In this document: positions 3,816 to 58,901 of the stretch, piece by piece
Layout of the letters: every line of letters begins with the position of its first letter
How positions within the stretch are numbered: position 1 is the stretch's first letter
Assembly (NCBI GenBank): GCA_051294905.1
Contig: CM119376.1
Span: 1,984,001-2,048,000 of the forward strand
Origin: Botryllus schlosseri
Taxonomy: Eukaryota
Length of the DNA stretch: 64,000 bases
Reading direction: 5' to 3'
Program-made: the position numbers and the translations under genes
The notes under the pieces: generated by a model
What the model saw: only the letters and a program-made list of their open reading frames with translations
Databases searched by the model: none
What the model was told of the DNA's origin: nothing

Positions 3816-3818
3816 TTT

Positions 3819-5644
3819 TTAGCCATCAGTATATATTTTTAAATATAAGTCATAGTTGGTTTCTACGTAGTCTTGACACTCACGTCCGAACGGTGAGTTA
3901 GGATGATGATAAGTCAAACTTCGGAGACATGTATCAACTTTTGCCGGTAGGTCAATCCATGGCGGAAGGGAAATTGGGCTGGAAACCGCAATGTCAAGTC
4001 CCCTTATGCTTGATATTTGAGTGTACATATTAAAAGTGGTAAACTTGATCGAATCTGGGAAAATTTCGTGCCAAGAGTTCTCGCATAGTGTTCGACATGG
4101 ATGTGCTGGGTGAGATCGGACGTAGCACTTGTATATTAAGCAAGCTCTGCGGTGGCGAATGTGAATCGGTAATTCATTCGTTGTATGTTGGAGTGTACAA
4201 ATCGGGGTGCTTTTCATTGCCCCGCAACAAATTCTCAAGGCGGCGTTTTGTATCCACTGGATACGGTTTGAATTGTATTTTGGGCTAAACATATATGCCT
4301 CAAAGCCATACTCGATCACTGACCTTATAAGTACTCTATAAATCGTTAATAACATTCCTTGGACGCTCCCCAAAAGGTGCCACCTAGGAATCGCAGCAAA
4401 TTCAATCGCGCAACTCATTTCTCTGCAACTACATTGGTGTGCGCTTTATAGGATAATCGTTTATCGAATACGACCCCAAGATATTTAAATTCATTGCTGA
4501 GAGGCACGGTTATCCCATCTATTTTCAGTCGGATATCTGGTAATTTACGTTTTTTGGTGAATATGATAGAGGAGCATTTATTTGCATTTATTCGAAATCC
4601 CCATTGTTTACACCAATCTGACAATTTCTCCAATGACGCCTGGAGTGAATTGGCAACGTGTTCGATATTGAGACCAGTCTCCCACAAACATATATCATCT
4701 GCGAATATATTGATGCTTGATTCAATTTGATCAGGCAGATCGTTCATCATGAGGTTGTGCATGACCGGGCTTAAAACGCTGCCCTGAGGGAGACCGTTTT
4801 CTAGCGGAAATATGTCTGAGTAAGAAGACCCCACGCGAACCTGAAATTTTCTATCTGATAAGAACGACCTCAACCAGTCTAGTACGTTTCCTCGCAAACA
4901 CTGACAGTGTCGCTTGTGGATTAGTCGATTTATCCATACCATGTCATACGCTTTCTCTAAGTCTATGAACACAGCTATTGCTGATCGCTGGTTCCATATG
5001 GACTTGTAGACATCGCCATGTAGACTCATGATACAATCTTTTGCTGAACGTCTACTTCGAAACCCGCTGGGCGCGGGATGGGAGTATTTTTTTTTGCCAT
5101 CGAGCCACCATTTCAATCTATTATTGATCATTCGTTCGACACTCTTACATAAATTGCTCGTGAGGGAAATGGGCCTGTACGAGGAAACGGATTCTTTCGG
5201 TTTACCAGGCTTGGGAATTGGTACAACGATAGCGTGCTTCCAAGATTGTGAGCATTTGCCGGTTCTCCACGTTTCGTTTATGATGCCGATCAGTACGGAT
5301 AAGCAATCTTCAGGCAGGTTTGCAAGCATTTGCTGACATACTCTGTCGATACCAGGGGCTGTGCTCTTTCGTGTTTTGAGAACATTCTTCAGTTCGACCA
5401 TTGTGAATTCTGAATTGATATCGACCGGTGACAAGCTACTTTGCACTGCAGCCGTTGCTTCGTTGTCGCGGAAGGATTTCTCAATCGAGAGGCATTGGTT
5501 TCGAAATGTCGGATCGTAGTTTTCATCGCTGCTAACAGAGCGAAATTGATTTGCTAGGGTGTTTGCGATATTCATGTCTCCTGTAACTGTAGCTCCGTTG
5601 TGCGACAACACGCTGATATGACTCCAGGTTGTGTAACCATTCAT
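3819..5644 (-). pseudogene. LINE ORF2 reverse transcriptase and connection region (frameshifted)
   Basis: APGID, SYRPISL, QSGF-like PSGFR, FIDLEKAYD, GLPQGSVLSP, FADD, YLGV; then YRVLIRSVIEYG. Confidence 0.93.
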
Positions 5645-10373: not shown

Positions 10374-11911
10374 CAGTGGCGGCTCGTGACAATATCGGGT
10401 GGTGGGGCAAGGGCTGCGAGCGACTTTTATCAACATGACGTCACAATGGCGTTTTCCAACGTAAAAAAGTAACTTTAATATGATGGTCAGATGAATTTCC
10501 CGACAACAGTGATTTTAACGTAGGTGCCGCGAGAGGTTTGCCGGTGAGCCGTGACTTGAAGTGTGGTAACAAATGTTTTATTCATTTTTTTTTTAATCAA
10601 AGGAATATTTCACATAATGTACGTGAACTAAGAATCGTCCCTATGCCACGAATCAATTATCAGGTCATCCTTAGTAGCATGCGTTATGATTTCATGGTAG
10701 AGTTAGAGATTACGCAAATCGATAGGCCGTCCGAAAGTGTTTCGTACACGATCCTGGTGTGTTACGACCACTGAGCTGGTGGTTACGAGTTACGACCAGG
10801 TGATAGGCAACCAAAGCGGAGGTACCCGGCGTACGATTGGATCAATGGACTGGACAATTTCTATCATCATCATCATTGGTTTATCAGCAATTTTATCAGT
10901 TCAATACACCACAAAAATGCGATACAATGAAAAGACAGGAATATGTCGAAGCGACAAGGAGTAGTCTTCTAGACCTTTAATTTTCGCTCTAAAGGCAACT
11001 GCGTAAACTAGCCTACGTACGGAGCAAAGATTCAATACGATTCATGTTCGCACTTGACTTGACCAGACTAATTCCAATGACTAGAACTCGAGCGATTGCG
11101 TAAGCCTAACTGCAAAGGTCAACGACTTCGGACACATACGCAATTGTTATCTCATAGATTGGGCCTGTCATATTGAATCCAAAACATCAATTTGAATGGT
11201 CTTTGAAGAACTAAGGACAGCAGCCTCGGAACTTCGGTCTCGGAACAACATAGTACATTTTGGCCTTGAAACTGGAGATTGTGACGCAACACATACGGAT
11301 TACTGTCTGCTGCCAAATCGCCGTTGGAAAATATATTAATCAATAAATACATGAATGAAAGCCGTAAACTTAGCATACTGTTACATGAAATCATCGAGAA
11401 GTAGCATTCGCAATCGACATATCGTACCAAGTTTCAAGAATTATCATGGTGCGAAACACCGTCAAAATCGACATATACCAGCAAAGGTCGAGTCAACGCA
11501 TATCACGGTAACCGAGTTCAGATATAGATGCGATTGTTATATCACACCTTAAGGGCGACAGGCATAGTTGCCCCACTTGCTCGGCCATTTTACGAATAGG
11601 AGAGAGTAAATCACCGTTTCTTTATTGTGCGCGGCTTTGAGAGAATAGATAGTGAAAGCTTGTTATGAGCGCTACCGGGGCAAGCCCCGGCTAGGCATTC
11701 ACAAAGCGAAAACACAGAAGAGAATTCGATTTTCGCAGAGACTTCGCTATGTATGTTAGGCATTTGTTAGCGAAAGCACAAGAATAATGCGGGTTTCGCC
11801 GTGATCTCGGTATATACTGATTGCTGTGCGTCTATAAATGGTTAAATTGTTATTGAACAGAATTTTAGGTGGGGCAATGCCCCAGTTGCCCTATAGGACG
11901 AGCCGCCACTG
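10374..11911. mobile_element. Non-autonomous hAT element
   Basis: TIR CAGTGGCGGCTCGT at both ends; exact 8-bp TSD ACCCACAG (10366-10373, 11912-11919). The interior is homologous (inverted) to 54923-55233, 58514-58650 and ~60790-61110. Confidence 0.9.
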
Positions 11912-12908: not shown

Positions 12909-13952
12909 GTGTGCTTAAACAAGAGTAACAGAATAATGAATAACTACATTACCCACGGGAACAGACCGCGTTCATTCGATCTGATTGGAAACGATCAGAT
13001 CAGTGCGGACGAGGTACTGGACCTGATATACTCACAGAAGGACCTAAAACAATGGAAGAATGAGATACAATCGATGTATCAAATCTCGCTGAAAGTCTTT
13101 AGCATTACAATGCAGGAACCAAATCAAAAAAACGAATTGGTCCAAAGCATTCAGGATGTGATTTACCGAGGCAAAAAATATGAGATCAGAAAGCCAAGGG
13201 CTCCGCTTACATATATAAGCATAAGAGCTGTACCAACAGAAACAACTTGCGAATCGGTAGCAAATGTAATACTAACCTGGAACGCAGGATCCTTGCTGAA
13301 AATAACAAGAGGTTACCACAGAGATACTAACTTCGAAAATGGCTTCAGACATCTTGTCTATGAGGATTATGTTGACGGCATCCTTCCACAATTCATCACG
13401 ATAGACGGAGCCAGGTGTAAAATATTCTTGCCATCTGCACCTAAAAACAATACCAGAAAGTGTTACGTGTGTGGCCAGACCGGGCATATTGCAGCAAAAT
13501 GCACGGCGAAAAGCTGCCATTACTGCGAATCAAAAAAGCATAACATGGTCGACTGCCCTGCAAGGAATGAGGAGTTTCCAACAATAACTAAGGAAGTCGA
13601 CTGTAGCGAAATTGCAGAAATTACCGTTACAGAAGAAACAGAAGTAATAGAAGAACAAAAAGATGAACAACAGGCTGGTGACCGAAGTGAGTTAGCAGAG
13701 GACTTGCAGATCTCATCCCAAGGTTCCGAATCTGAGGATGATGGTCCTAAAATAAAGTCAACAGTGTCTTGCGCGCAAACGCTCACTGACGAATCTGAAA
13801 ACTCAGATATTGCAGTCTCCTCAGAAGGAGAGCAAAGTGAAAAGGAGCAAACTCAGGAACGCAGCACGCCAATTCAAAGCAAGCCCAAAAAGAAAGCCAA
13901 AAAAATAAGTCTGGCAGAAAACACCCCAAAACGCAATAATAATGAGCATTAA
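12909..13952 (+). CDS. Tx1-type ORF1 with two zinc knuckles (first ATG at 12936)
   Basis: RPRSFD motif, ISIRAVPTE, CYVCGQTGHIAAKC, CHYCESKKHNMVDC, acidic tail. Confidence 0.85.
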   Translation: MCLNKSNRIMNNYITHGNRPRSFDLIGNDQISADEVLDLIYSQKDLKQWKNEIQSMYQISLKVFSITMQEPNQKNELVQSIQDVIYRGKKYEIRKPRAPLTYISIRAVPTETTCESVANVILTWNAGSLLKITRGYHRDTNFENGFRHLVYEDYVDGILPQFITIDGARCKIFLPSAPKNNTRKCYVCGQTGHIAAKCTAKSCHYCESKKHNMVDCPARNEEFPTITKEVDCSEIAEITVTEETEVIEEQKDEQQAGDRSELAEDLQISSQGSESEDDGPKIKSTVSCAQTLTDESENSDIAVSSEGEQSEKEQTQERSTPIQSKPKKKAKKISLAENTPKRNNNEH

Positions 13953-16900
13953 AATAACATCGCTAAATGCAAATGGAATTGACAGAAACTGGAAAAATCT
14001 TACCAACCTAATAAGAAAACAAAATAGCGATGTTATCTGTATTCAGGAATCTCACAAAATAAACACAGAAAAAATTAGAGATTGGTGCAAAAACAACAAA
14101 TACATACCTTACAAAAACTGCCTGGATAAACAAGATATCTGGGCAAACAGAGAGAAAAACAAACGAATATACTTTTTAGGAACACTAATACTGATTAAGT
14201 CAGAAATGGAAAATAAATACCAAATAATCGGAAACATTTTAGTAGAGCATAGAGTACAATCAATCTTGCTAAAAAGCAAAGAAAGTGTCTTAGAGGTATG
14301 GAATGTGTACGCACCTCCCAATCCTGGGAAATACCAGACAGATCTCTTTAAAAACCTCTCAGAAACGCTATACGATACTGCCAATAGAACGGTTATTTGC
14401 GGGGACTTTAATTTGATTATCAATGATAAAGACTGTAAGGTGAAGACAAAATACAACCTGTCACCGGCAGCGAAGACTTGGAAAAACTTCATTGAAACCC
14501 ACTGTTATCAGGATGTATATAGATGGAGAAATCCTAAAAAATAAATACACACCAAGATAACAGGAAAACAAGAAAGACGTATAGATAACATATACGCCAC
14601 AGACAATATCGCAAAAGACGTGTCTATATGTAAATACACCTACAATCCGATATCTGACCACATCTATATGATGGAGATGACAATATCGGACAAACCACGA
14701 ATTAAATTTGGAAAAGGGTCGTGGAAATGCAATGTCAGCACTCTAGACTCTCCCTTGATCGACGATCATATTAGAACAACAATTGAAATGATGAAGAAAA
14801 ATAAGAGCAAATACGATTCCATCACACAGTGGTGGGACGACCTTAAATCAGTTTTAAAAACTGAAATAAGGAGAGTAACACAATATTACAATCCGCAGAA
14901 AAACAAAGAGGCCGAAATCAGGGCAAAAATAAGAGTCATAAATGAAGAGCAGGATAGCTATGAAAAAACTAGATTACATCAAGAACTGAAAAAAGAGGAA
15001 AGGAAAAAACTAAATTTCCTTTGCCAAACAGCAAAGTTGATCGACAAAGAAAAATACGAAAAGCCTACTAAGTATTTTTTGATAGGCTGAAATCAAGAAA
15101 TCGACAACAACAAATTCACAGTATCCTAGATGATAAGGGACAAACTGTAGAACGCCCAGATGAAGTTAAAAAGATCATTCAAAACTTCTATCAAAAGCTC
15201 TGGGACGCAGAGAAAAACTTAGACCATGATCTTCAAGAAATATACCTAAAAGAATTAAATGAGGTTAATATTTCTGAAGAAGATCAAGATTTCTTAGAAA
15301 TGAGCATTACTCAAGAAGAAATACTACATATTCTAAAAAATATGAGCTCATGCAGAACTCCAGGAAGCGATGGTCTTACAAAAGAGTTCTACATCAAGTA
15401 CTGGTCAGTTCTGAAACAAGAACTCTTAGAGCTATACAACAACGCCTTATTTTTTGGAGCGACGTGTAATTCGTGGCACAAAGGCATTGTAAAATTGTTA
15501 TACAAAAAAGGAAATGCGGAAGACATCAAAAATTGGAGACCTATAACTTTATTAAACGTAGACCATAAAATCCTAACAGCCATCTTAGCCAATCGATTAA
15601 AAAATGTAACCAAATCTATTATACTAAATACGCAAAAGTGTGGCATTGCAGATAGGCAAATATCCGACGCGCTAAGAAATGTCAAAGCCGCGATAGACAC
15701 TGCTCTCCATAAAAATAATGACCTTTTCATCCTAAATCTGGATCTGGAAAAGGCCTTCGACAAGGTTCCTCACTCGTATCTATATCAAGTACTAGAGAAA
15801 TACAGAGTACCAAAAACAATTAGGAAATTAATAGCAAACCTATATGACAATTCGTACAGCAAAGTACCAGTAAATGGCGGAATGACGGAGAGGATTCAAG
15901 TGGACAGGGGACTCCGACAAGGATGTCCTTTAAGCATGTGCCTTTACGCGATGACAATAGATCCACTTGCAAGAAGAATAGTTAGAAATAAGGATATAAA
16001 AGGCGTTAGATTAGGTAGCAGCGAACTCAAGATTCAGCAGTATGCTGACGATGTTACCGCTATAGTCAAAGATATTCATTCCATCGACAAAGTAATAGAA
16101 GAATTCGAGAAATTCGGCAAAGCCACAGGGCAACGCCTCAACAAAGAAAAATCAGAAATTTTAAGTACGAACCCCAATAGAATCGTGAACAGTAAATACA
16201 ACAATATCCTCAAGAAATCCACGGAAATCTTGGGACAAACATTCGGCCAAAATTATATAGAATTAACATGGAAGAAGAGAATAGATCAACTTAGGAAAAT
16301 CACCATCGCGTATAAAGATAGAGATCTAACGTGGTTTGGTAAAGCGATAATTCTCAACAGCCTCGCAACATCCAAACTAATCTATAACGCGAGAATAATC
16401 GATGCTCCAACAAAATATATCAAAGAAATAGAAAGTATATTTTTTAAATTCATTTGGCACCCAGAGAAGGTCGAACCAATCAGGCGAACGCAATTTATTT
16501 CAGAACAAATAATGCACAAACTAAAAATACCTTGCGTAGAAAGTAAGTTTAAAGCCAGTAAAATAGAGAAATACAAGATAATTAAAAATTTAGACTCACC
16601 TAGTGAATTCTGGCATCATGAAGCGTTGTACGTCTTGGGCACAAAAGTCCTTGACATAAATACAAAACTGTACTCCAATTCAATTCCACACAGAGACAGA
16701 ATGAGCGCAGAATGGAGACACATCTTAGAATCTGCAAAAAACATAGATTGGAATGATGATCAATGGAAAATAGCGACACACAAAGACATATATAAGGTAC
16801 TTAAAGAAAAAAAAGCAACCACAACACTAATTAGACTAGAAAACGGAGCAATGATTAATTGGAAAAAAGTGCAAGCGACAAATGAAGATGTAAACAGAAT

Positions 16901-17270
16901 AAACAACAAAGAAAGGATAGTGAACATAAGAACGGCATGCAAAGGCTACTTCTTTGGTGAAGAAAAGAGAAGGTTAAATCTTCTGAGGATAGACTCTCTA
17001 AATAATAATATAACAAACTGCAAGTTTTGTGGCAACAGATACGATAACCTAGAACATATCTTTCTGAAGTGCCCATTTGTGATCGAGGTGATAAATAACT
17101 TAAGACTATTAATCAAATAGACAAAATTGGGATTAGATCAAATATTCTACAATGAAAATTTGGAGAAGAATGATTGGACGATACTAAGTATTTTAAAAAG
17201 ACAAGTCATGTACACGAAATTAGGCCTAGATAAAGAAAACGGAAAATTATCAAATACGAAAATAACAGCG
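13942..17270 (+). pseudogene. Tx1-type ORF2 (APE + RT + C-terminal Cys motif), frameshifted
   Basis: ITSLNANG, CIQESH, NVYAP, GDFN, SDH, GSWKCN, TPGSDG, NWRPITLLNVDHK, DLEKAFDKV, GLRQGCPLS, QYADD, CKFCG...LEHIFLKC. Confidence 0.93.
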
Positions 17271-18779: not shown

Positions 18780-21324
18780 TAGGGCTGGGCAAAATCGAGT
18801 ACCTAGCTGATTCGATTCTGAATCGAGCATAAACCTTCGAGTCGAGTCGAGTATTCGAGTAGCACTCTAAAAGCGGTCTTATGTTCAAAACAAACAGAAA
18901 TCAGTCCCATTTCCACATTTTCTATTAGTACAAAAGAAAATTTATGACAAACTGATGTCAAAATGACATTGCCACATGTGGTCACTTGAAATATTGTAGT
19001 TACTTGTACACAGGCCATTCAAAATGTAGGATACACCGTAAACATGCAATTAAAAATGGACTTGTCAATTAGTTAGTATAAACCGTTGCATTTCAGAAAG
19101 ACGAGAGCTTCCACGTGTCTCCCTGTGAGGCTAGATCTTAATGCAGATGCTGTATTCCCAGCTGTTGAAAATACTCTTTCTGATGGAGTAGAAGTAGCTG
19201 GCACACTCAGATATTTCAATGCTAGGTTTACAATGTTTGGATACTTGGCTTTATTCTCTTTCCACCAGTTCACAGGATTCTGATCCTGTGTGAGCCTTTT
19301 TTCACAGAAGTATTTCTCAAGCTCATCATGAATTAAATTAACATCAGTGTCGCTAGAGCTGTCACTTGACTCACTGGAATCATAAACTGCGTCAAGCAGC
19401 TTATTCAATAAAGAGCTTTTACTTGGACCACTGTTAGTTGTGGGAGTAGCTTTGGTAATAACAGTAGCATTTTTTTCCTTGCCCACTACATCCTGCAGCA
19501 GTTCACACTCAAGCAAACCGCGAAGTTTAACAGATTGTGTGGAGTCAAGTCCTTTGACTTTATATCTTGGATCAAGTGCGGTCGCTTTCCAAGTAATGTC
19601 ACCGTCTACAGGCATTTCAAGAAATCGTGCAGACATTTGCTCTCCCAGTTTTTTGCAAAACTCTTTCATCGGTCCGCTAGCTTCTGATGCTGCATCCCAG
19701 ACATGTTTCTTCAATGATGTAATGTACGGATTTCTGAGTGATATTGAAACTTGCTTTTCAGCACCCAAGATCTCAGTGGCTTCAGCAAAAGGTTCCAATA
19801 TGTCAGTCAGTTGCTTCATCATAATCCAGTCCGATTGTTTCAGCATGTATTTACTAGTTTGGGATTGTTGCTCGTTCAATACAGCTATTACTGGCCACTG
19901 CATATCAAATAATCTCCGCAACATGTAGTAGGTGCTGTTCCACCTGGTTGCCACTTCCATCACAAGCTTTCGGAACTCCACTTTCATCTCCTTGCATTTC
20001 TGCTTTAGTAATGATGTTGCTACCTCCGATCTTTTGAAATGAGTTACAAGTCTTCTAACGTCAGCTAGGCACTGTTGAATTGAGGAGATTGCCAAAGCAT
20101 GTGTGATACAAAGTTGTATTGAGTGCGCTGAGCAACCTAGACTGCACCAACCATGCTTTTTTTGTAACATGTCTTTTGCTGACTTTATGTTTGAACCATT
20201 GTCACTCACTGTACAAGTAACTGCTGATAGCTTCACATTGAGTTCGGCTAATATCTGTTCAACCCAACTTGAGATGTTCACGGCAGTGTGACGATCATCT
20301 AGCAATTTACAGCTCAGCAACCATGATTGCAGGGAAAACTTTTCATCAATGAAATGTCCTGTAACAGCCAAGAACGACTCCATATTGATACTGGTCCATG
20401 CATCAAATGTCAGTGCAAGATGTGTTACTGTGGCAAGTGAATGTTGCAGGTTACTTTTCGAGGCAACAAATAAATCTTCTATGCGCCGTGCAAACGTACG
20501 TCTTGATGGTATGCTATACTTAGGTTCCAGGCTTGAAATCAAATTTTGGAAATTTTCCCCCTCAATAACAGAGAGTGGCCTTAAATCACCCACAATAAAT
20601 TTGACAATTTTTTGGGTAATATGCTCTTGCCTAGAAGGGGTCATGAAAGAAAAATCCAATTTAAGCTGCTTCGGACTTGATGTGGACGTAGAAGCTCCAG
20701 TGTTGAGATTTTCAGGTTCTCCGTACGATCTTCAGTTCAAATCTATGGTAGGATGCTTGCTTTTTATGTGCCTCAGTAGGTTGGTGGTGCTATCGAGAAA
20801 AGATAGCTTTTCTTTGCAAAGTATACAAGCTACCTTCCGACCATCGCTTCCTTTGTCGACAGGCGAACCAAAGTATTGCCACACCGCTGACTTCCTTCCT
20901 TTCGAGGCTTTGCTCATCGCTGTGCTAAACACGCTTGTGTAATTTCTCAACCGGTATAAATTACAGCCACGGTATACCAGGCTCACGCTCACAAAAAACG
21001 GATTACCACGTTCTCCATTATTGCGTCATAATGGTTACGGAGCAGTCAGAGACCGTGAATTAAGAAATGTTTTAAGGTGTATAACCTCATCTTTACATGG
21101 ATAATAAATTATATTATTAACATACTGGAAGATTTCTGTGCTGACACTTGATATTGCTGCCTGCCCAATGAAAAATTTCGACCGATAGATAATGGAAATA
21201 TTTTCAGTCGCAAGGGGGCGCACTTGCAAGTACTCGAAAAAATCGTCTTTTATTACTCGACTCGAATCATTGAAATAAATACTCGATTCAGATTCGAGTA
21301 CTCGAATCATTATGCCCAGCCCTA
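18780..21324 (-). mobile_element. hAT (Ac/ZBED-type) transposon with complete ends
   Basis: 12-bp TIR TAGGGCTGGGCA; exact 8-bp TSD CTCGTAAG (18772-18779, 21325-21332); TCGAGT subterminal repeats at both ends. Confidence 0.96.
19073..20917 (-). pseudogene. hAT transposase (BED finger + DDE + dimerisation domain), 614 codons with one in-frame TGA at 20732-20734
   Basis: SAVWQYF..C..C..LLRHIKSKH BED finger; LTFDAWTS, VSDNGSN, CSAHSIQL, TRWNSTY, WWKENKAKYP, VPATSTPSERVFS. The ORFs 20732-20992 and 19073-20659 are in the same frame. Confidence 0.93.
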
Positions 21325-22542: not shown

Positions 22543-22659
22543 TATCTTTCGAAAAACGCGCGAAAACGAACAGTGGTAGATAGACTCAGAGCAGTCAGAG
22601 CTTGGGCGTCGCCCACCTGTGGATTACTGCTGAACATACCTTGGGATATACAAAACGAT

Positions 22660-23904
22660 ATGGAAAATATGGATACTAATCGCAAGCATGGATATGCATC
22701 AGCATTACGGAGGAATACCCCGAAACCGCCTATCCTGCATCATAGGCCCAGGTCACTCTTCCTCAGAGTTCCGACAGATATTCCATACGACGCAATATGG
22801 GAAGACATATGCAACAACGAGATAGCCAGAAACTTCATTGACCAAATCGAATCCCTCTGGGAGATGAGGAAAGGCGTGTATATCATGACCCTATTCAAAG
22901 ATAAGCAAAACGTTAAAACAAGAGACGCCCTTTACGATCAAATCGAGAAACAAGGCATCAAAGGCCACAGTTTCCGCTACATCAGGCTGGAGCTCCCGCG
23001 ACCTCAAGCCACCCACCTGATCGCAACCGGAATCCCCACCGAATCGGAACCACAAGCAGTCAGACGCGACATAAATAGTCTCGACTTCGGTACGGTAGCC
23101 GCCATGACGAGGGTCTATAGGAAAAATACCCGAATTTATAACGGCAGGGCAAATATATGGATGGAATCATTCCAAAGAGAGAAAATGCCATCCCACGTGT
23201 ACATAGACGGTTACCTCTGCCAAATTCGAACCGCAGAGGACATATATAGAAGGAAATGCTACCTCTGCAACGAAGAGAATCATATCGCCAGAGAATGTAC
23301 AAAACAAATCCAGGAAAATGAAAACGAAGACAATATGGAGCCAGAACCACAACAAAATGCGGGCTCCGCGCCAAATCCAGAGCCAAAACCAGGGCCACAT
23401 CCGGGGCCAAATAGAAACAGACTCCATGCCTCTACTGGGGTAAGACTAAGCCAAACCGGACAAGACCAGAAAGGTGCGGAAGTTATCACTGACTGGTTTA
23501 ACCAGATACACACCGTCAGAAAGCAAGAAGATGAAGCCAAAAAGAGGTCTGACCGACCACCCAAAACCACGGCCAAACCAATGACCGCGCCAAAACCCAG
23601 ACCTAACAAGAAGGTAGAAGCAGCCAAAAACGTTGTTGAAATAGAAGACAGCCTTGCCTCGCCGCCAGCAGAGGAAAGGCAGGGTGAACAAAACAACCTT
23701 GCTCGCCCAGAAACCGATTCCTTCGATGAACACAACGAAACAATTATTGACCCGGACTCAATAATATCTGACAACAATAAAAGAGCCAGAGGTTCATGAA
23801 GCAACACCAGCATAGAAACGGTATCCGAGAAAAAGCTGAAACACGATAGCACAGACGAGGATGATAGCGGCCGAACGCTATCATCAGACAGCTCGAACTC
23901 ATAA
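22660..23904 (+). pseudogene. Tx1-A ORF1 (single CCHC knuckle), premature TGA at 23797-23799
   Basis: RPRSLFL, ATGIPTES, CYLCNEENHIAREC. Confidence 0.8.
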
Positions 23905-23908
23905 AAAA

Positions 23909-43597: not shown

Positions 43598-44397
43598 TAT
43601 CGCAGAATTGGCCCGGATCTACGTCGGGTGCAACACGGGTTCTCTGCCTTTGTATCGCCAGGAGTTTCCTTGCTGTCAAACTTTGCAGCTACAATTTTCA
43701 TTTCTTCGCAGGAGCCGGTTTTCGGTGTCCGTCGCAATGAGCCTCTCCTCCCCAGCACCGGGGACCCTCCTTCAGACGACGCTCTCTTTACTGGCTGTCC
43801 CGTATGCCTACTTTTGTGCTGTGAATCAGAACTTTCTCTTCTTTCTGTTTTAAACGGAGTATTTTTCTCGTGCAGCAGTGGGATTTCAACATCGTCGTCA
43901 ATGATCACCTGGCAGAAAGGTACCCTGTCATGACTGGTGAGTTTCACTTCTTCTCCTGCGACGTCCAGTATTCCGGAAGAGAGATGCATGACACACTCAT
44001 GACTCTTCAAAAAGTCCATTCCAAGAAGTCCGATTGGCACACCCAAATCCGCTACAACCACCGTCTGTCGAGCCGCCACCAAGCCAACGTTGAGCTCCAC
44101 TTTCACGGTACCAGAGATGTCCAGTGGGTATCCTCCCACCGCATCGAACGAACGCGTACACGGATTCAGAACACTACCAATCGATTCTAGAAGTGATTTA
44201 TCTAGTAATGTCGTACCAGCGCCACTATCCACCATAAACCATATCGATTGAGTATTCACCTCAATTTCAGCATACCAGCTATCTTCCCACTGGATAGCTG
44301 AAATCCATGGTCTCAAAAACAGGTCCATTTTCTTTTCATCATCAACAATCGCAGTAGCAGGCGATGAGGACCTCATGCCTGCTGCATCGCGTTTTTT
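43597..44397 (-). CDS. Pol remnant: aspartic protease fused to an unrecognised tail
   Basis: FMVDSGAGTTLL and GLLGMDFL retropepsin motifs; in the -1 frame relative to gag. Confidence 0.88.
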   Translation of the reverse strand, partial: KKRDAAGMRSSSPATAIVDDEKKMDLFLRPWISAIQWEDSWYAEIEVNTQSIWFMVDSGAGTTLLDKSLLESIGSVLNPCTRSFDAVGGYPLDISGTVKVELNVGLVAARQTVVVADLGVPIGLLGMDFLKSHECVMHLSSGILDVAGEEVKLTSHDRVPFCQVIIDDDVEIPLLHEKNTPFKTERRESSDSQHKSRHTGQPVKRASSEGGSPVLGRRGSLRRTPKTGSCEEMKIVAAKFDSKETPGDTKAENPCCTRRRSGPILR

Positions 44398-49300: not shown

Positions 49301-49715
49301 ATTTCCATTACCTCTCGATTCACTGGCAATCCTAACTACGTCGGCAAAACTGAACTCTGGTAGATCCGTCAACAAGTAAGAAAATACAAGCTCCATACAT
49401 TGCTGTGTAAATTGTTACTGTTACTAGAGACATCAGAAGAGAACTCAGCAGCAGTTCAGTTAAAGCAAAAATACTGTCCCACGCTAAGGCTTCTCAAACA
49501 GCTATAATGAAGAAGTAAGGTCTGGATTTCGCTAGCAATGACATGAAATCAGGCATTAGTAGTGTTGCAATAACCAACAACTCACGCATCCGCAGTAACG
49601 AGTCGCCATAAAGGGAAAAGAACTGCAATATTTCTGCACACAATGGTAGCCTTATGGAGGCAAAATTACCACCGCCATCCCTCCATAGGGGGCGCTAGAG
49701 CGGTGAGAATCGTCC
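46355..49715 (+). mobile_element. ISL2EU-type (PHIS group) DNA transposon, decayed
   Basis: Imperfect ~60-bp TIRs starting GGACGATT..., each flanked by AT (46353-46354, 49716-49717); THAP and transposase remnants inside. Confidence 0.8.
46886..48420 (+). pseudogene. THAP domain (two exons, GT-AG intron ~47005-47089) and HTH part of an ISL2EU transposase
   Basis: CCVLKCNN...KKWI / RVCGEHF...GAVPGIF THAP signature; later DLGVRFNLSTASVS...TW...LTIWVSREKIREHMPRSF. Confidence 0.8.
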
Positions 49716-51107
49716 ATTGGAATTCAATCCTGTGTATGATCGTGTATTGCTGTGAGGATGTGCGAACTTAAATAGAGGAACGCATCCCAGAACGCCGTTA
49801 TATTCTGCGAAGTGTGAACAATCTTCGCGACGCGAGCTAGTCAATTTGATGCCCCAACCACATTGCGTTGGATATAATAGAGAGGAAATAGTGATTGAAT
49901 GCGCGCTTTCCCGTATATAATCATCGGTTTTGTGCATTTATTCTTGTCTGCTTGAAACAGTAGTATTCCTGAATTGTCACGCAATGAGCGTGTATAGTTT
50001 AATTCGTTACTGACTCGGTGCACTGCACACCAGATTCTTAGTGGCACTAGTTCTGCACACCGGACGGACTGGTAATGAGCGCATCAATATAGAATTTCAA
50101 CCCGTTGTCCATGAGTAGGCCCTATTTGGTAGAAGGCGGAGTTCTGGTCGCGACATGCGCTCATGTTGTGCTTGCTGCAGTTACACTTGAACAACCTCAC
50201 AATTTAAAGACTATAGTCAGCTGTATGGCTTGATATGATCAAGTACTGCGCCGGTATTAAAACGTCGCATTCGTTTTTTGATGCGGTACGCAGCAATACC
50301 GTGGAGTGAGTTCTCATGCGACTATGACGCTTTCGACAGTCAAAATGGAGTAATTATGACGTCACAGGACTGTGCATACCCATTACCCACATAAAATAAC
50401 GGTTGCGCGCGACGGCCCCCAGCGCAACGGTAGTTATTGACTACATGGCGGAGCCATTCGATAGCTTATGGAGCCCGAGCTGGAGCCGGAGCGGAGGTAT
50501 CAATGAGCTCCGGAGCTCGGAGCTGGAGCGGTTAAAAATTTGTGCCAGCTCTAAAGTACTGGTGCACGGAGTCACGAACGGCAGTAAACAAAGCACGGTT
50601 ACGGTACAACAGACACAAAATCGACTGTTACATTATAGATAACTAACCTACGGATAGATGGGCAACACGTGATTCACGGTCGAGAGACCGGATGCTCGTC
50701 AGATTTGTTGTCGCTTCATAGCATGAAGCGGGCAAAGCGGCAGGTTGTCGGCCAGATCGACTGTTAAAAATGCAGGTATGTTTGGTGTGGATAGGATATA
50801 GGGCAATCAGAACAGGTTATTTAGTGATACAGTACATAGCCACTGGCGCGGCTATCAAAGCATTAATATCAGGAGTATATTTAAGGAGCCAAAGAAGTCA
50901 TGATATTCACTCTTATTATTCAGGTTATCAATTGGTTTCAATATTGAATCCAGCTGCATGAGGTTTCCTTGAAATAGTTTGGTTTGTATAATCATAGATA
51001 GGTTTTGGTATGTATTGATAAATAAAGAGAAAAAGTTAGTCGATGTATCTGCTTTACCTGTGACAGACTTGTTGGATATCAACAGGAATATTTTTTTCAG
51101 TTACAGT

Positions 51108-52408
51108 ATGTCAAAATTAAGGTTTAGTTTGGCTAAATTAAGGTTTAGTTTGGCTGACTAGAGCCGAGCCCGTCTTATGACTCTGTGGCTGACTAGAGCC
51201 GAGCCGTCTTATGACTCTTGTAAGTGCAAAGCTGGATGTACTTAGATAAAAGAAATGATGAAGTTCTATCCAAAGGAAAAATGATGCATGGGAAGATCTT
51301 GCCATTCAATACAATTCCTTCCCGGATGCTCGAAAGGTATCATCCAAGCAGCTTAAAAAATGTTGGACTAACATGAAGACGAGGTAAGCTTTTTGATGGA
51401 ATTCTAGGAATGTGCCAGGCCAGTTCTAATGCGTATGCATTTCATCAGATCGAAAGACGATATTACAGAGGGACGGGCCCACATGGCGGCAACTGGAGGC
51501 CCTCCAACCAAGGCAGTACCATATATGTCACAGATGATACATATCATAATACCAGAACAATTCGAGCCACATCTTCATCAGCATCTTCGGGTACAGTATG
51601 CCATAATAATGGACACTTATGGATAAAAGCACCATATTAAGCACAAGCAGTGATCCCAACAAATTAGTATAGTCAACGGTATTCGCTGTTGATATGTGAG
51701 CATCCCTGACTCTGGTTATGTAGGTTTTGCTGCGTGTTGGGTTACCGCTTAGCTGTAAAACCTCCAAAATCGCTCCATCTAAAAAACTGTAAAACCATAT
51801 TTTCGCAAACCCGAAAGCTAACACTGACCAGAATTAGCAAAGCACAGTGATTGATAGTCGTGAGGACCATAGCCAGTCGATGGTGATCAGGGTCTAGGAC
51901 ATATCCTCGATGTGGTGTGGTCATCGATATTGTTTATTTATTAATGAGCGTTAACTAAAATCTGTGTAAATATATACGGATACATGACTAACATGAGCAT
52001 AGCTTCATAAGCATACCGTATAGAAGTTATTAGAATTTAAACACAATTGCTATGCAATGAGGGCTTTCTATATCATATGTCCCTATTTCAGATGTGATTT
52101 TCACGACTGCAACTCCGGTGGTAAAAGAAACGGAAAAGACAGGGTTGCCAAGAAAGAAACCAAAAAGAGCTGAAGTTAATAACTTCATATCGGATACCAT
52201 GTTCTTGGAGCATGAGCTGAAAGTGGAAAAGATTGAATTAGAAATTGACTGCTTGCAACACCAAAGGCTCTTAGTGGAGGAGCAGCAGTCCCTTGCTGAT
52301 CTGCAGTTGGTACTTGTGACCAAGCACCTGTTGATAGCAGATGCAAGGCAAAAGCTTGAAGGCTCGCCTTCACCAGATCTAGTAGAAACTAGTCTACCTA
52401 CTTTATAA
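51108..52408 (+). pseudogene. Myb/SANT-like DNA-binding protein of Harbinger type (spliced, decayed)
   Basis: KNDAWEDLAIQYNS...KQLKKCWTNMKT at ~51275-51385 followed by GTAAG; coiled-coil C-terminal exon EHELKVEKIELEI at ~52094-52408. Confidence 0.7.
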
Positions 52409-52817
52409 AAGCTCTCAATTTAAGATTCATTTCTTCTGCTTGCAGCACCGTGATGTAAACTCTTTTTGTGGTATTCCCATTATCGATAGTTACTATGCCT
52501 CTAATTGCAGCACCAAGACATGAATACGTTTCTTTTGCTATTCCCATTTAACTGCTTAAGCCTCGACTTGCAACACCGCACCGCGATATTAATGCTTTTT
52601 TTTTGCTATGGCCATGGCCATGTAACTGGGCATTATTGATAGGTTCTGTTCTGTTCCACTTATTTCTTTCTACGCTGTTTCCATTTCGTTCGGTTTTATA
52701 CAAGTTTCACCGCAGTTTCTTTATTTATGATAACAAATTAAATTGTTCCATTTCGTTCGGTTTTATACAAGTTTCACCGCAGTTTCTTTATTTATGATAA
52801 CAAATTAAATTGTATTC

Positions 52818-53929
52818 CTAAAGTGGGTTTCTACGATCCGGCGTCTCTGAGCTAGGTAGGCCTCTCAGGGATCCTCGTACATCTCTTGGTGCCTCTACAA
52901 CTTCTTGCCGGATGACAGGGACATCAGTTTCATTGTTGATAATGCAACTAAATTTGAAGGGAGTTAAGCGCTTGATATTAAAAAAATCATGAAATATATT
53001 ACCTGTGTTTTCTGGCATAGTTGTATAACACTGCTGTTGCAACAATCAAAGCCATTGCTGTGTCGACATTTATCCGTAGACCCAGTGATAAGCAGGGAAA
53101 CACGCTCTTCCACACTCCAAAAAATCCGTTCTATGGTTATTCTGGAGGATATTTGAATCTTGTTATATCGACGTTCAGCAGCTATTTGTCATAAAATCGT
53201 GAGGCCTCATTGGCTGCAACTTCACTTTGTGGGAATTTGATGTATGTTGAGCTTTTGTGAGCTATGGCAATACTGTCCAGGTTCATGTTCCAGCTCCCCA
53301 ACAACAACTTGAAAGCTTCCTGTGGCGTAAGAGTGCAAAACAACAAGGAACTTCAACAACGGGGGCAGGGGTTGACCTTTGTTGGATGGGTTGGTAAGGT
53401 CACACTGTAGGACCTCCATAAATCCACTAACACCGGCTTTCGTTAAGCCTATAGCGATCAGAAAACAGTTCCTCAGTGAGGAATTCCAAGGGATTATCAA
53501 AATCTGTAAGTTACTTCTGTACTTGCTGCAGCCTGTTTCCATCCACTTGCATGTAATATTCTAACATATCTATGTCAATATCCATTTTATCTGAAAGGAA
53601 TGAAACACGTACCGTATGCCTGTCTGCCGATATGGAATCGGTGCCTCGTGCACACCAAAGATCCTACTAATTGTACACGCGGTGTGATACTGCACACCAA
53701 ATATATTACGCTAAACATACCGGGATTCCAACCCTGGAGGGTATCTTGACATTTCATATCGAGCGAACGCACAATAGCGAATAATGCCAGACATGTCGAA
53801 AATGTCTTTGAATATGAAGCCTCTACTCCAATGGAGTTCAACGAAGCCTTTACTCCGTTGCGCAAGACTTGAGTTTGAGGCGTCTCTGATTACTGGCCTA
53901 GTCAGTAATTCGAAATCTAATTTTCCCAT
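52818..53929 (-). pseudogene. HARBI1-like DDE nuclease, decayed and internally deleted
   Basis: N-terminal RPVIRDASN, LPPLLKFLVVLHSYATGSFQVVVG, and ITIER.FGVWKSVFPCL at ~53090-53145. Confidence 0.8.
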
Positions 53930-54399
53930 CTTAATTATGCCTGGTTATGAAAACGTCTTCTCTTCATTTATCAATATATAATAAAACCTATCTATGAATA
54001 TACAAACCAAACTATTTCAAGGAAACCTCAGCTGGATTCAATATTGAAACCAATTGTTAACCTGAATAATAAGAGTGAATATCATGACTTCTTTTGCTCC
54101 TTAAATATACTCCTGATATTAATGCTTTGATAGCCGCGCCAGTGGCTATGTACTGTATCACTAAATAACCTGTTCTGATTGCCCTATATCCTATTCGCAC
54201 CAAACATACCTGCATTTCTAACAGTCAATCTGGCCGACAACCTGCCGCTTTGCCCGCTTTATGCTATGAAGCGACAACAAATCTGACGAGCATCCGGTCT
54301 CTCGACCGTGAATCACGTGTTGCCCATCTATCCGTAGGTTAGTTATCTATAGTTACATAGCCGAGTAACAACACAACACCAATGATATATTCTCACCGT

Positions 54400-54922
54400 A
54401 TAGAGATGTTCCTTCTGGTGGCTTTTGCAGCTTTATAATGATAGATTCGAGAACCTTTAAATGAAAAAGAGAATGACCAGGAGCAACTATGGAAAACTTA
54501 TTGCTAAAATATTTTGCGCACTCGGGTGTTTCAGGAGGTGCTGTCCGATGGCAGAATTACATGCTTTTATTTGATCATAATCACGCATCGTAACTAGAGA
54601 CTGTGATGATGAAGAATATATGTCATCAGCCTGCGAATTCCTAATTTGACGTGGGACGTGTTGACGAATTCTTTGTTGCAAACGCTGAGATATTCGACCC
54701 ACATACCGACTGTCGCATCGGTACGTATATATATTGGTAAATTGTGTTACTCTGATGAATCGCAGGAAACACATCTTTTCGCGTTGCTGGTAGTAAAGAT
54801 TTCGTAGCGAATATTACTCGGGGTTCCACTTGTGGAAAAGAATGACTCCATGAGAACCTAATTTGTTTTTCAAACCTGTTACAAGCTGTAAAAACTTCGC
54901 GAATTTTCAACAGCAGAAATCA
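54400..54922 (-). mobile_element. Penelope-like element remnant (GIY-YIG endonuclease region)
   Basis: KDVFPAIHQSNTIYQY / CDSRYVGRISQRLQQRIRQH / SAIGQHLLKHP, across a frameshift. Confidence 0.8.
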
Positions 54923-55507
54923 CAGTGGCGGCTCGTCCTATAGGGCAACTAGGCATTGCCCCACCTAAAATTCTGTTCAATAACAATTCTTTACCATTTA
55001 TAGACGCACAGCAATCTATATATACCGAAATCACAGCGAAAATCGTATTCTTCTTGTCCTTTCGCTTGTAAATGTCCAATTGCCCATATATAGCGAAGTC
55101 TCTGCGAAAATCGAATTCTCTTCCGTGTTTGCGCTTTGCGAATGCCTAGCCGTGGCATGCCCCGGTAGCGCTCATAACAAGCTTTCACTGTCTATTCTCT
55201 CAAAGCCGCGCACAGTAGAGAAACAGTGATTTAGGGTGCGTTCTAGGTGCGGTTCCGTGCCAAAAGTTTTCAAGTCTAATGCTGAAAACACCTCACTACG
55301 AACGCAAGGCCTGTTTTCACTACCACTACGAACGGCAAGTGTTTTGGCAATTATTTTGTGGAACTGGTCACTTGGAACGGAGAGTGGAGACGTGATTTCG
55401 ACAACCGTGATTGCCAAACCGGCGTCGAAGCTATGTCGTTCGTAGTGCTGGCCGTGTTCCATGGCTGTGCTGGTATAGAGACCGTAGTCAGACAGTATAG
55501 TAACAAT

Positions 55508-56361
55508 TAGCGTTGGGACCCCGGGAAATCCCGATCCCGGGATCCCGGGATTGGTCCCGATGAAATCCCGGGATTTGTGAACAGCATCTACCAAGGCTTA
55601 TGTAGCGCCATATCTCTTATTTTGGTAATAAAGCAGTGCCACAAACTCGGCTGATTGTGTATAACAGTGGCCTCAAACACGCGGCCCGCCAGAACTGTTT
55701 TTGCCGCCCACGTCGGCGTTTTGACTTTTCAAGCATTCGACAATATTAAACTCGAAAATTTCAGATTTCGGATTTGAGAACTTGAAATTTCATTCTGAAA
55801 CCACTCCAAAAACCTGAATCGCATCCACTAGCTGCTAAATTATAATGCGACAGCTTTTACGATGACACGATGCATTTGTCGTCTCGCATGGTTTCTAACT
55901 GTCTATATAACTCCGTATGTCGCCAAATTATGCCAAGCACAACAATATTTTTAAAAAATATTGAAAAATATGACTTTTTCGTGGCAACCGTGAATATTAC
56001 AATGGTGTATTACATTTTCACAATGTGTATGGAATGCCAATCTGCAAGGTCCGACAAAAAAGGCGTACTGGCAAATACATATTATACCCCTATTTGATGC
56101 TGCTGCCCGCCGCGTCATCAAAAACTACGAAATTGGCTCGCGAGCAAATTGGAGTTTGGGACCCCTGATCTAAACGATGATACTCTTGATGCTCTTATGT
56201 TTTGCGTCAATTCAATATCACAAGGACTAAATGTTATTTGTGTAACTTGTAGGTGTATTTTACTACTTTTCTAATCCCGGGGAATCCCGGGATTGAGGAG
56301 CGAAAATCCCGGGAAATCCCGATCCCGGGATTTCAAATTTGATCCCGAAGTCCCAACCCTA
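55508..56361. mobile_element. hAT MITE with ATCCCGGGA subterminal repeats
   Basis: TIR TAG(C/G)GTTGGGAC; exact 8-bp TSD GTAACAAT (55500-55507, 56362-56369). Confidence 0.92.
55665..56167. mobile_element. Charlie-like hAT MITE nested in 55508-56361
   Basis: Ends CAGTGGCCTCAAAC / GTTTGGGACCCCTG; the flanks have central TA but do not match; related inverted copy starts at 61119. Confidence 0.6.
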
Positions 56362-58901
56362 GTAACAATAGTGCATTGGCGTTCTGTAGATGCTAGGTAT
56401 GGTAGGTTTTGATAGTCGGTGATATACAAATGGCTTGCTTGGTTACAGTAACTTTCTCAACTTTTTTACAGTAATTGAGTATTTACCATGTATGTGTGAT
56501 CCGCAATTCAGCAATATTAAGCAAGAAGTACCGGTAGTCAAAATCAATGCACGACAGAATCAGCATCCGTATATGTATGCGACAATTGACATTTTGAGTG
56601 GAAGAACATCACGTCGTAAGAAGATGAATTGTGACACCGAGAATAAATGCCTGGCAGAACAATAAATGTCTGTCTCTTCTAACTAGGTAAGCGAATGTAG
56701 GCTATCAGAGTAGATGGTGCAGTAAAATTCTTGGTAATGTCCCTATCAGAAGAAATTGCTGCCAAGTGCCTTCCTGATAAATTGTCATTGAACAGTAAAA
56801 ATTTAAAATTGACTATAAAGTCACTGATCTGAAATGATTTATATCGTTCTTGCTTTAGAACCGGTATTCAATTTTCAAAAATCCTCCATCTGGCCAGTCT
56901 GTAAAATATTATCTCATTTATTCCAGAAACACAGCTCAGTAAGAATGGTTGTTGAACAAGCTATGTTTCGTCTCAAATCACTCTGGCTATTGATATTTAG
57001 AAGATGTGACGCTAGTCCGACCAACACACGGCTGATAATTGTGGCTTGTGAAACGCTTACATATCGCAAGAGACCTGATTCAAGATCTGGATGCAGTTGA
57101 TGCAGATGGATGCAACCACTTGGAAAAGATGCTGAAACTCATTTGAATTTGGATCCTGATGTAGCTGCAACCATATGTTTACATCATATGCTGCTTTATT
57201 TGCTAATTTTCATATCTCAATTTTCAATTTTTACCAATGAAACCTCAACCCCTGTTTGTATGTGATGTTAAATAGCATCAGTATCTTTAATCCGTGGTGC
57301 GAAATGGTAAAAAGTAGGTTCACTGAAAGATGCTTTAATTGAGCAGTTATTGAGGAAGAATGTTCTCAGTATAGCTTCAAATAGGGTTCCATCATCTTCG
57401 AGGATGGCTGCAACAACGCTGTAAAAAAGATACCACATGAAATTACTCTGCACCTTCCTTGACTCATGCCAGGGATATCTCTGGCGCAGAACGTCCTGAG
57501 GCATCTGCAGTGCTGTAGTGTGCGCCGACTACTTCCTAAAATTATACAAGTGGTCAAGAGTTATTGTCAAATGTATTAAAACTCAGTTTGTCATGGCTAA
57601 TTAAAATGACTGATCGCGCATTGTAATACACGACTATGGTTGTGCTTGCATCAGCATCTCCATCATCTTGGCACTTACTAATGGATTCAAAATTAATTTA
57701 ACATTTCCAATTATCCTAGAAAGAATCTTAATGCATGATGATTTCACATAACCGCTGACTGATATAAGCCTATTCTTTCGTTACTTAGAAAGCCATCCAA
57801 CAATCTGGGCTTCCATATATATTCTACATTGATTTATGAGAAATTGAGCTGCTAGCTTGAAAATGTCACCATTCTTCAGAATTGATGTATTCATACTCTG
57901 TATCTCAGGTTTGGTTGAACCAAGCTATTACCAACCGCATCACTCCCCTTTCGCTCCCAATCGTACCCCTTGAGATCTCCACACTGATATAGCCTATTTT
58001 CAAATGTGTGAAATAAAAACACTCTCTGCAAAACATATCATTACTATATAAACTAGGGTACTCCGGGATATTCAGTAGGCCTATAGGCCTATATATATCC
58101 CTACAAACTACCATATACAATACATAACTTAGATATATGCTCTTTTGCCATGACAAATCCACTCAATAGAACCACTATTCAATAACTGCCACCTCCATGA
58201 CCAATATTACTAATGTCGACCCGCTCCTGCCACCTGAAACAGGTAGTTTCGCGTCAGCAACAAGCACGAAAACACACGTTCGTAGTACCCCGCTAGCACG
58301 AAAATAATATCGCGTTTCGCGCCACTACGAACGCCCTCCGTAGTCGAGCGAGACCCACTACGAACGATCGGGTTTTCGAGACCATCGGTGCGAAAACTAC
58401 AAGTCGGAACGGGGTAAGTGTGAAACCGCTACCGAAATCAGGCTCACTTCGAACGGTCGTGTTTTCGCAACTGGTTTTGAAATCATTTCGAAAACATCAC
58501 CTAGATCGCACCCTTACCTTACCTTATATCTGAACTCGGTTACCGTCCCATGCGTTTAGTCGACCATGGCCGGTATAGGTCGATTTTGATGGTGTTTCAC
58601 ACCATGATAATTCTTGAAACTTGGTATGTCATGTCGTGATGGTGGTATTTAACACTGTCGCAAGTTTCAGGGTTTCTACTTAAAGTTTAGCGTAGTAATT
58701 CCGTTTCCGGAGTTGAGTGTGTGCTGATCCGTCATGTATCGCAAACAGATTTTACTCAAAAGCCGGTATTGGTATCCATTGATTCTGACGATGTTCCCTG
58801 CCGAAATCGGTCATGACATTTGGTACAGTAAGTCTTAATGTTAGTATCGAACGCTGTATCAAGTTTCAAGTTTGTCACTGAACTATGTTAGTGGTAATTT
58901 C

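What the first reader, a model, noticed from the sequence alone, without database searches (positions are those of the whole stretch)
50627..54358. Harbinger-type gene pair inside ~400-bp TIRs with a 7-bp TSD (MuDR-like layout)
Seen: ~400-bp high-identity inverted repeats starting TATAGATAACTAACC, flanked exactly by GTTACAT on both sides. A Myb/SANT gene (+) starts ~75 bp inside the left TIR and a HARBI1-like nuclease (-) starts ~28 bp inside the right TIR. The genes converge and I found no separate short Harbinger TIR or TWA TSD inside. Known: PIF/Harbinger makes 3-bp TWA TSDs (as at 55234-58513 in this window), and long TIRs acting as twin promoters for convergent genes is the maize MuDR arrangement. 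Inference: this may be an unusual PHIS lineage with altered target-site spacing, or a Harbinger gene pair captured by a P-like (CATAG-type terminus) element.
Basis: partly seen in the sequence, partly recalled or inferred. Interest (0 to 1): 0.75.

Follow-up and report, generated by a model that had tools for sequence, protein, structure and literature searches.

The report
P-type transposon carrying dead Harbinger genes
This is a real 3.7-kb jumping gene in what earlier notes call a sea-squirt genome, but its two Harbinger-type genes are broken passengers, and its ends, 7-base footprint and excision scars point to a P-element-type enzyme made elsewhere, so it is a curious hybrid and not a new kind of Harbinger.

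Summary
Window 50634-54351 is a 3,718-bp element with 404-bp inverted ends (95.5% identical) that start TATAGATAAC. It is flanked by a perfect 7-bp duplication, GTTACAT. Inside are a Myb/SANT gene (+) and a HARBI1-like nuclease gene (-).

Both genes are dead in this copy. The nuclease lacks about 104 codons holding two catalytic aspartates, and it also has a stop and frameshifts. The Myb exon has three in-frame stops. Contigs from three runs, one under another organism label, cross the deletion junction without a break, so the crippled form itself spread and was moved in trans.

The closest intact relatives of the nuclease (70-80% identical) sit in ordinary Harbingers. These have the same convergent gene pair, short GGCCCGTAT-type ends and 3-bp flanks. 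No such ends survive here.

Public contigs hold about 36-nt remnants of this family's termini (18+18 palindromes). That matches the scar left by the long staggered cut of P-type transposases. Galileo and 1360 (P superfamily) make 7-bp duplications, and Galileo has long inverted ends.

Best reading (0.65): a Galileo-like, non-autonomous P-type element with a captured Harbinger gene pair. A Harbinger lineage with 7-bp duplications is unlikely (about 0.15). Earlier notes of this scan reported TATAG-ended, 7-bp P-type families and such scars elsewhere in this genome.

The parts
50627..50633 (.). left copy of the 7-bp target-site duplication GTTACAT
50634..51037 (+). Left long terminal inverted repeat (404 bp), terminus TATAGATAAC. 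The first 18 nt are what the scars keep. The first 35-51 nt are shared with far more abundant relatives. GGGCAA occurs at 50660, 50730 and 50801.
51114..51218 (+). Two small tandem duplications (21 bp x2, 35 bp x2) in the 5' part of the Myb gene. Most other copies lack 66 bp here.
   Evidence: joint 51134->51201
51108..52408 (+). Myb/SANT-like (Harbinger second gene) pseudogene, approximate limits. Myb_DNA-bind_5 exon at 51196-51384 with three in-frame stops, middle exon at about 51449-51591, last exon ending at stop 52406-52408.
52679..52813 (.). 67-bp x2 perfect tandem repeat in the spacer between the two genes
52999..53585 (-). HARBI1-like (DDE_Tnp_4) nuclease pseudogene, intronless like its relatives. 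In-frame TAA at 53511-53513, frame shifts near 53443, about 53280 and about 53120, stop at 52999-53001.
53185..53190 (-). Junction of the internal deletion that removes about 104 codons (first and second catalytic Asp, LLGD motif). Contigs of three runs cross it without a gap.
   Evidence: alignment A1, columns 190-293 absent; table 8 (records 6, 14, 29)
53586..53951 (-). Region upstream of the nuclease gene with no recognisable homology.
53952..54351 (-). right long terminal inverted repeat
54352..54358 (.). right copy of the 7-bp target-site duplication GTTACAT

Best explanation
The element is a non-autonomous member of a P-superfamily-type (Galileo/1360-like) cut-and-paste transposon group. 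A P-type (THAP9-like) transposase encoded elsewhere in the genome recognises the terminal roughly 35-50 nt of the long inverted ends. It cuts with a stagger of about 18 nt inside each end and inserts with a 7-bp stagger in the target, which gives GTTACAT on both sides. The interior is a captured Harbinger two-gene module (Myb-like gene and HARBI1-like nuclease) that has lost its own Harbinger ends and is now cargo.

Shown:
- The structure, the 7-bp duplication and the decay of both genes.
- The spread of the deleted form.
- The ordinary-Harbinger nature of the nearest relatives.
- The 18+18-nt remnants of these termini in public contigs.

Inferred:
- That the acting enzyme is P-type.
- How the capture happened. 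Candidates are template switching during gap repair, or inward growth of the inverted ends around a nested Harbinger.
For: 1. Perfect 7-bp duplication at exact TIR ends. 1360 and Galileo of the P superfamily make 7-bp duplications (PMC3698922, PMC4168063). Galileo has 0.5-1.2-kb TIRs, conserved between species only in the terminal ~40 bp (PMC3688188).
2. In one search, joints link the first 12-24 nt of the left end to the last 16-27 nt of the right end. Six of nine rebuild to 36-37 nt, and one is a perfect 18+18 palindrome (50650->54333). They occur in runs X1, X5 and X12. Drosophila P transposase cuts 17 nt inside each end (PMC7776569), which predicts such scars.
3. Depth over the first ~50 nt of each end is 10-40 times that of the rest. 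Other contigs diverge at 50668/50684 and 54301. Only the tips are shared with abundant relatives, as with P and its MITE BuT5 (PMC3698922).
4. The nuclease lacks its catalytic core. Contigs of X12 (another organism label), X6 and X1 cross the junction without a break (table 8). The family was therefore moved in trans.
5. The nearest relatives, P0013 (L003) and P0015 (L002), lie in ordinary Harbingers with the same convergent gene pair. They have GG(C/T)CCGTAT termini and 3-bp flanks: ATT/ATT, and TAA at the one end seen.
6. Known PHIS groups make 0-, 2- or 3-bp (possibly 5-bp) duplications (PMC4482050, PMC12730594).
7. Other copies' right flanks mostly start GT(T), and the left-flank consensus has GT at -7/-6 (table 7). 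This fits a 7-bp duplication across the family.
8. Earlier notes of this scan report P-type families with TATAG ends, 7-bp duplications and such scars in this genome. I did not check these notes themselves.
Against: - I never saw a P-type transposase gene bounded by these termini. None is in the window (sampled only part of it).
- The long ends and the gene pair have similar depth in the DNA runs. The chimera is therefore a coherent multi-copy family, as a true two-gene element would also be.
- No individual second copy with its own flanks could be read, so the 7-bp duplication is directly seen once.
- The scars were read from contig alignments with only 21-30 nt on the shorter side, and their own flanks were not seen.
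- The focal duplication GTTACAT fits Galileo's GTANTAC only at three of its six specified positions.
Confidence: 0.65

Rival explanations
1. A new PHIS (PIF/Harbinger-related) lineage whose own nuclease plus Myb partner recognise long TATAG-type ends and make 7-bp duplications. This copy would be a deletion derivative moved by intact masters with the same ends.
For: - The gene pair and the long ends form one multi-copy family (depths).
- No Harbinger-type ends remain inside.
- Bacterial IS5-family relatives vary widely in duplication length (my own knowledge, not tested here).
- Parts of other copies keep open frames where this one is broken (table 4).
Against: - The nearest relatives at 70-80% identity are ordinary 3-bp Harbingers with unrelated short ends.
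- No PHIS group with more than 3 (perhaps 5) bp is described (PMC4482050, PMC12730594).
- The 18+18-nt scars are not expected from this enzyme family.
- The core-deleted form is the one seen in three runs.
- By earlier notes, the same end type and duplication length belong to P-type families in this genome.
Confidence: 0.15
2. A non-autonomous element of another long-TIR superfamily (Mutator/foldback-like or hAT-like) that carries the Harbinger pair as cargo.
For: Long TIRs are common in Mutator and foldback elements. Earlier notes list several such families in this genome.
Against: By those notes, such families here make 8- or 9-bp duplications, and 7 bp is at or beyond the edge for both superfamilies. 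Their excision does not leave about 18 nt of each end. TATAG ends with 7 bp match the P-type families noted in this genome.
Confidence: 0.08
3. GTTACAT is a pre-existing local repeat or a chance match, and the true duplication is short (for example TAC with ends AT.../...GT).
For: The flanks can formally be re-parsed as a 3-bp TAC duplication if each end is extended by two imperfectly matching bases.
Against: - That parse needs four extra chance matches (1/256) and an end mismatch.
- The 7/7 match has a chance of about 6e-5, and the in-window controls gave 0-3 of 7.
- The flank consensus of other copies shows GT at -7/-6 and at +1/+2.
Confidence: 0.02

Closest known systems
Galileo (and 1360) of the Drosophila P superfamily
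   Same: 7-bp target duplication. Very long inverted ends conserved only at the tips. Mostly defective copies moved in trans. TIRs that grow by taking in other sequence (PMC4168063, PMC3688188, PMC3698922).
   Different: Host is a tunicate, not a fly. Terminus is TATAG... No P-transposase remnant inside. The interior derives from another transposon superfamily. The duplication here matches the GTANTAC consensus only partly.
BuT5, the MITE of the Drosophila repleta-group P element
   Same: Non-autonomous partner that shares only the end segments with its presumed master and has an unrelated interior (PMC3698922).
   Different: BuT5 is about 1 kb, non-coding, has 3-bp TIRs and makes 8-9-bp duplications.
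Canonical PIF/Harbinger two-gene transposons (relatives in L002 and L003; neighbour at window 55234-58513)
   Same: Homologous Myb-like and HARBI1-like genes in the same convergent order.
   Different: Those have short TIRs and 3-bp duplications. The focal element has 404-bp TATAG ends, a 7-bp duplication and dead genes.
Gene-capturing transposons such as Pack-MULEs (my own knowledge)
   Same: A non-autonomous DNA transposon whose interior is foreign sequence amplified along with the ends.
   Different: The cargo here is the complete gene module of another transposon superfamily, not host gene fragments, and the carrier is P-type.

Membership tests
P superfamily (as a non-autonomous member) | 7- or 8-bp target-site duplication | tested here: met
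   Perfect 7 bp, GTTACAT. Literature: PMC3698922, PMC4168063.
P superfamily (as a non-autonomous member) | Excision with a long (about 17-nt) stagger inside each end, leaving scars that keep about 17 nt of both ends | tested here: met
   joints: 6 of 9 rebuild to 36-37 nt, one a perfect 18+18 palindrome, in runs X1, X5 and X12. The scars' own flanks were not seen. Reference: PMC7776569.
P superfamily (as a non-autonomous member) | Termini shared with an autonomous element that encodes a THAP / P-type transposase | not testable with these tools
   No P-type gene in the element or among the ten largest ORFs of the window. The genome outside the window is not readable here. Only unchecked earlier notes report such elements with TATAG ends.
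P superfamily (as a non-autonomous member) | Palindromic target motif (GTANTAC for Galileo) | tested here: inconclusive
   GTTACAT matches three of the six specified positions. Other copies' flanks start GT(T) and show GT at -7/-6 (table 7).
PIF/Harbinger (PHIS) | DDE_Tnp_4 transposase with an intact catalytic triad | tested here: not met
   About 104 codons with both Asp residues are absent. There is also a stop and frameshifts.
PIF/Harbinger (PHIS) | Second gene with a Myb/SANT domain | tested here: met
   Myb_DNA-bind_5, E 2e-7. It is homologous to the partner genes in L002 and L003 but has three in-frame stops.
PIF/Harbinger (PHIS) | 0-3-bp duplication (TWA, ANT, CWG, AT or none) | tested here: not met
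   7 bp. Known range from PMC4482050 and PMC12730594.
PIF/Harbinger (PHIS) | Short TIRs like those of its relatives (GG(C/T)CCGTAT...) | tested here: not met
   None in 50634-54351. Relatives.
Mutator / MuDR-like | 8-11-bp duplication and a MURA-type transposase | tested here: not met
   7 bp. No such ORF among the ten reading-frame pieces of the element scanned against Pfam.

The most novel reading that the evidence does not exclude
The HARBI1-like nuclease and its Myb partner, in intact master copies with these same ends, are themselves the transposition machinery. That would define a PHIS lineage with long TIRs, 7-bp duplications and P-like deep staggered end cleavage.
Probability: 0.12. 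Interest if true: 0.75.

Novelty: new variant of a known kind. Interest (0 to 1): 0.36.

Why it matters
If the reading holds, one transposon superfamily (P-type) has picked up and amplified the whole two-gene module of another (Harbinger), in at least two organism labels. This is a clear natural case of transposon-by-transposon capture.

It is also a warning for annotation. Classifying by the encoded protein would file this family as Harbinger, while its ends, footprint and scars say P-type.

The 18+18-nt remnants add evidence that the deep staggered cut known from the Drosophila P element also operates in a chordate relative.

It does not change what is known about Harbinger target-site chemistry.

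Tried and rejected
- **Other copies in the window:** none. There is only one related right terminus, at 1145-1164, with no partner.
- **Collection scans:** exact-match scans for the 20-nt terminus found nothing in metagenome or viral contigs.
- **Word search:** the 112-aa nuclease piece found nothing.
- **Empty site:** no empty-site allele or uninterrupted paralogue of the host repeat was found. The flanks are themselves repeats. Only 54923-55233 has a paralogue in the window (11607-11911), and it does not span the site.
TGGAGYGACGACTC is absent from the window. Relatives that share the first 35 nt continue with a sequence holding only its GYGACGAC core, in reverse orientation, which is weak.
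- **Link to the neighbouring Harbinger:** no similarity between it and the focal genes.
- **RNA families:** no Rfam family in 49500-55300.
- **GGGCAA motif:** it occurs three times per arm at 70-71-bp spacing and holds the GGCA core of the THAP1 site (PMC2879526). It lacks the T of that consensus and is only marginally unusual (97 of 2000 shuffles), so it stays speculation.
- **Composite of two complete P-type MITEs:** rejected, because the inner edges of the arms carry no terminus.
- **PHIS phylogeny:** Placement rests on the nearest relatives' structure.
- **More distant relatives:** the ends of L004 and L005 could not be defined.
Full report
**What is there**

The element spans window 50634-54351 (3,718 bp).
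- Its arms, 50634-51037 and 53952-54351, are inverted repeats of 404 bp at 95.5% identity with one 4-bp indel.
- Both arms begin TATAGATAACTAACC. The first 24 nt occur nowhere else in the 64-kb window.
- GTTACAT lies directly outside both ends, at 50627-50633 and 54352-54358.
- A 7/7 match has a chance of about 6e-5.
- As an in-window control, the 16 other TATAG...CTATA pairs with 10 or more of 12 complementary end bases had 0-3 of 7 flank matches.
- A re-parse as a 3-bp TAC duplication with 2-nt longer, mismatched ends is possible on paper but needs four more chance matches.

**The two genes are dead in this copy**

I searched the reading-frame pieces one by one, by reference. I did not build or search a joined or repaired model of either gene.

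Myb gene (+ strand):
- The exon at 51262-51384 matches Myb_DNA-bind_5 (E 2e-7).
- The longer stretch 51196-51384 aligns with the Myb partner genes of two related Harbingers but carries three in-frame stops.
- Some other copies of the family have an extra G at 51243, 51244 and 51259 (table 4), and there the frame reads through.
- Most other copies lack 66 bp of small tandem duplications at 51114-51218.

Nuclease gene (- strand):
- Its pieces are 70-80% identical to full-length HARBI1-like proteins P0013, P0001 and P0012.
- Alignment A1 places the start at 53585.
- An in-frame TAA at 53511-53513 sits where the closest relatives have Tyr.
- There are frame changes near 53443, about 53280 and about 53120. 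Most other copies lack one base at 53443.
- The stop is at 52999-53001, the same end point as in P0013, P0015 and P0017.
- About 104 codons are missing between 'RFYDK' and 'AAERRYN' (junction about 53188). These are the stretch that holds the first and second catalytic aspartates and the LLGD motif.

**The crippled form itself spread**

When public contigs were laid on 50300-54700, the family proved to be multi-copy in organism A and also present under a second organism label (run X12). Contigs of X12, X6 and X1 (records 14, 29 and 6) run across the deletion junction without a gap. A nuclease without its catalytic core cannot have moved these copies, so the family is mobilised in trans.

**Where the genes come from**

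The nearest full-length relatives lie in ordinary Harbingers.
- In L003 (P0013) and L002 (P0015) the nuclease is followed by a convergent Myb_DNA-bind_5 gene. This is the same layout as here, so the convergent order is native to this lineage and needs no MuDR-like explanation.
- Their ends are short and read GG(C/T)CCGTAT...
- In L002 both flanks read ATT. In L003 the one end present is followed by TAA.
- Nothing like these ends or their ACTTGA-type subterminal repeats is left inside the focal element.
- DNA similarity to L001-L003 is limited to the coding parts.
- The published PHIS groups make 0-, 2- or 3-bp (perhaps 5-bp) duplications (PMC4482050; PMC12730594).

**What moves it**

Three observations bear on this.
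1. Depth over the first 50 nt or so of each end is 10-40 times that of the rest. Many contigs follow the terminus for 35 or 51 nt and then diverge (loose ends at 50668, 50684 and 54301). Only the tips are shared with much more abundant relatives. This is the relation between a P element and its MITE BuT5 (PMC3698922), and it is the pattern of Galileo, whose long TIRs are conserved only in the terminal ~40 bp (PMC3688188).
2. Contigs in X1, X5 and X12 join the first 12-24 nt of the left end to the last 16-27 nt of the right end.
   - Rebuilt from tables 5 and 5c, six of nine total 36-37 nt.
   - One (50650->54333) is a perfect 18+18 palindrome of the terminus.
   - Drosophila P transposase cuts 17 nt inside each end and leaves long 3' extensions on the donor (PMC7776569). 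Joining two such extensions gives exactly this kind of scar.
   - As far as I know (my own knowledge), hAT, Tc1/mariner and Harbinger excision do not leave 18 nt of both ends.
3. Other copies' right flanks mostly begin GT or GTT (loose ends at 54353 and 54354). The consensus of left flanks has GT at positions -7 and -6. This fits a 7-bp duplication with a GT... preference across the family.

1360 and Galileo of the P superfamily make 7-bp duplications (PMC3698922). For Galileo the consensus is GTANTAC (PMC4168063). P-like elements are known from Ciona (cited in PMC3698922).

**Earlier notes of this scan**

These are unchecked leads. They report, on other pieces of the same genome:
- a P-type family with TATAGAG ends and 7-bp duplications;
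- Galileo-like foldback P elements with 7-bp duplications;
- hundreds of 17+17-nt palindromic scars.

They changed my reading from 'possibly a new PHIS lineage' to 'P-type carrier'. My own partial test of them is the set of joints. I could not read those other loci.

**Verdict**

- Most likely (0.65): a Galileo-like, non-autonomous P-type element whose interior is a captured Harbinger two-gene module, now decayed.
- Unresolved: how the capture happened. Candidates are template switching during gap repair after excision, or inward growth of the inverted ends around a nested Harbinger. Galileo TIRs are known to take in other sequence (PMC4168063).
- Main weakness: I have not seen a P-type transposase gene between these termini, and the 7-bp duplication is directly read at one copy only.
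- A PHIS lineage with 7-bp duplications remains possible (about 0.15).
- Another long-TIR superfamily: about 0.08.
- Chance or a pre-existing repeat: about 0.02.

**Context**

The element lies in a nest of transposons. Its flanks are themselves repeats (depths). A canonical Harbinger with a TTA duplication lies 880 bp downstream. The window also holds LINE, LTR and hAT coding remnants.

Noticed in passing
window 1145-1164: A right terminus (ACGTAGGTTAGTAATCTATA) closely related to the focal element's last 20 nt, with unrelated sequence inside it and no partner end in the window. It is probably the end of another family of the same end type.
   Followed up: partly
P0001 and P0012 (locus L001 for P0001; alignment A1): Two of the closest full-length relatives of the nuclease are intact ORFs on short intron-free Logan contigs. 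Both have lost catalytic residues: P0001 has Gly for the first Asp and Gln for the Glu, and P0012 has Arg for the Glu. This could be a domesticated, catalytically dead HARBI1-like gene or a decaying transposase.
   Followed up: no
window 55234-58513: Canonical Harbinger with TIR GGGTGCGTTCTAGGTG, TTA duplication and CACTACGAAC subterminal repeats. Between about 55510 and 56365 it carries a segment bounded by GGGATCCCGGGATT-rich inverted repeats that looks like a nested MITE.
   Followed up: no
window 53534-53830: This stretch is 3-15 times deeper than its surroundings in the runs laid, with loose ends at 53678 and 53692. A short, much more abundant repeat overlaps the region upstream of the nuclease gene.
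   Followed up: no
L002 15191-15258: Two related Harbinger ends lie head to head, separated only by ATT. A second element or MITE of the same family abuts the first.
   Followed up: no
window 2985-5644, 12909-17117, 19076-20659, 22573-26100, 43600-44376: Coding remnants of retrotransposons (RVT_1, RNase_H, zf-CCHC, gag aspartyl protease) and a hAT transposase (Dimer_Tnp_hAT). The window is largely transposon-derived.
   Followed up: partly
window 54923-55233 and 11607-11911: An 89%-identical inverted pair of about 310 bp, an unclassified dispersed repeat that forms part of the focal element's right flank.
   Followed up: no
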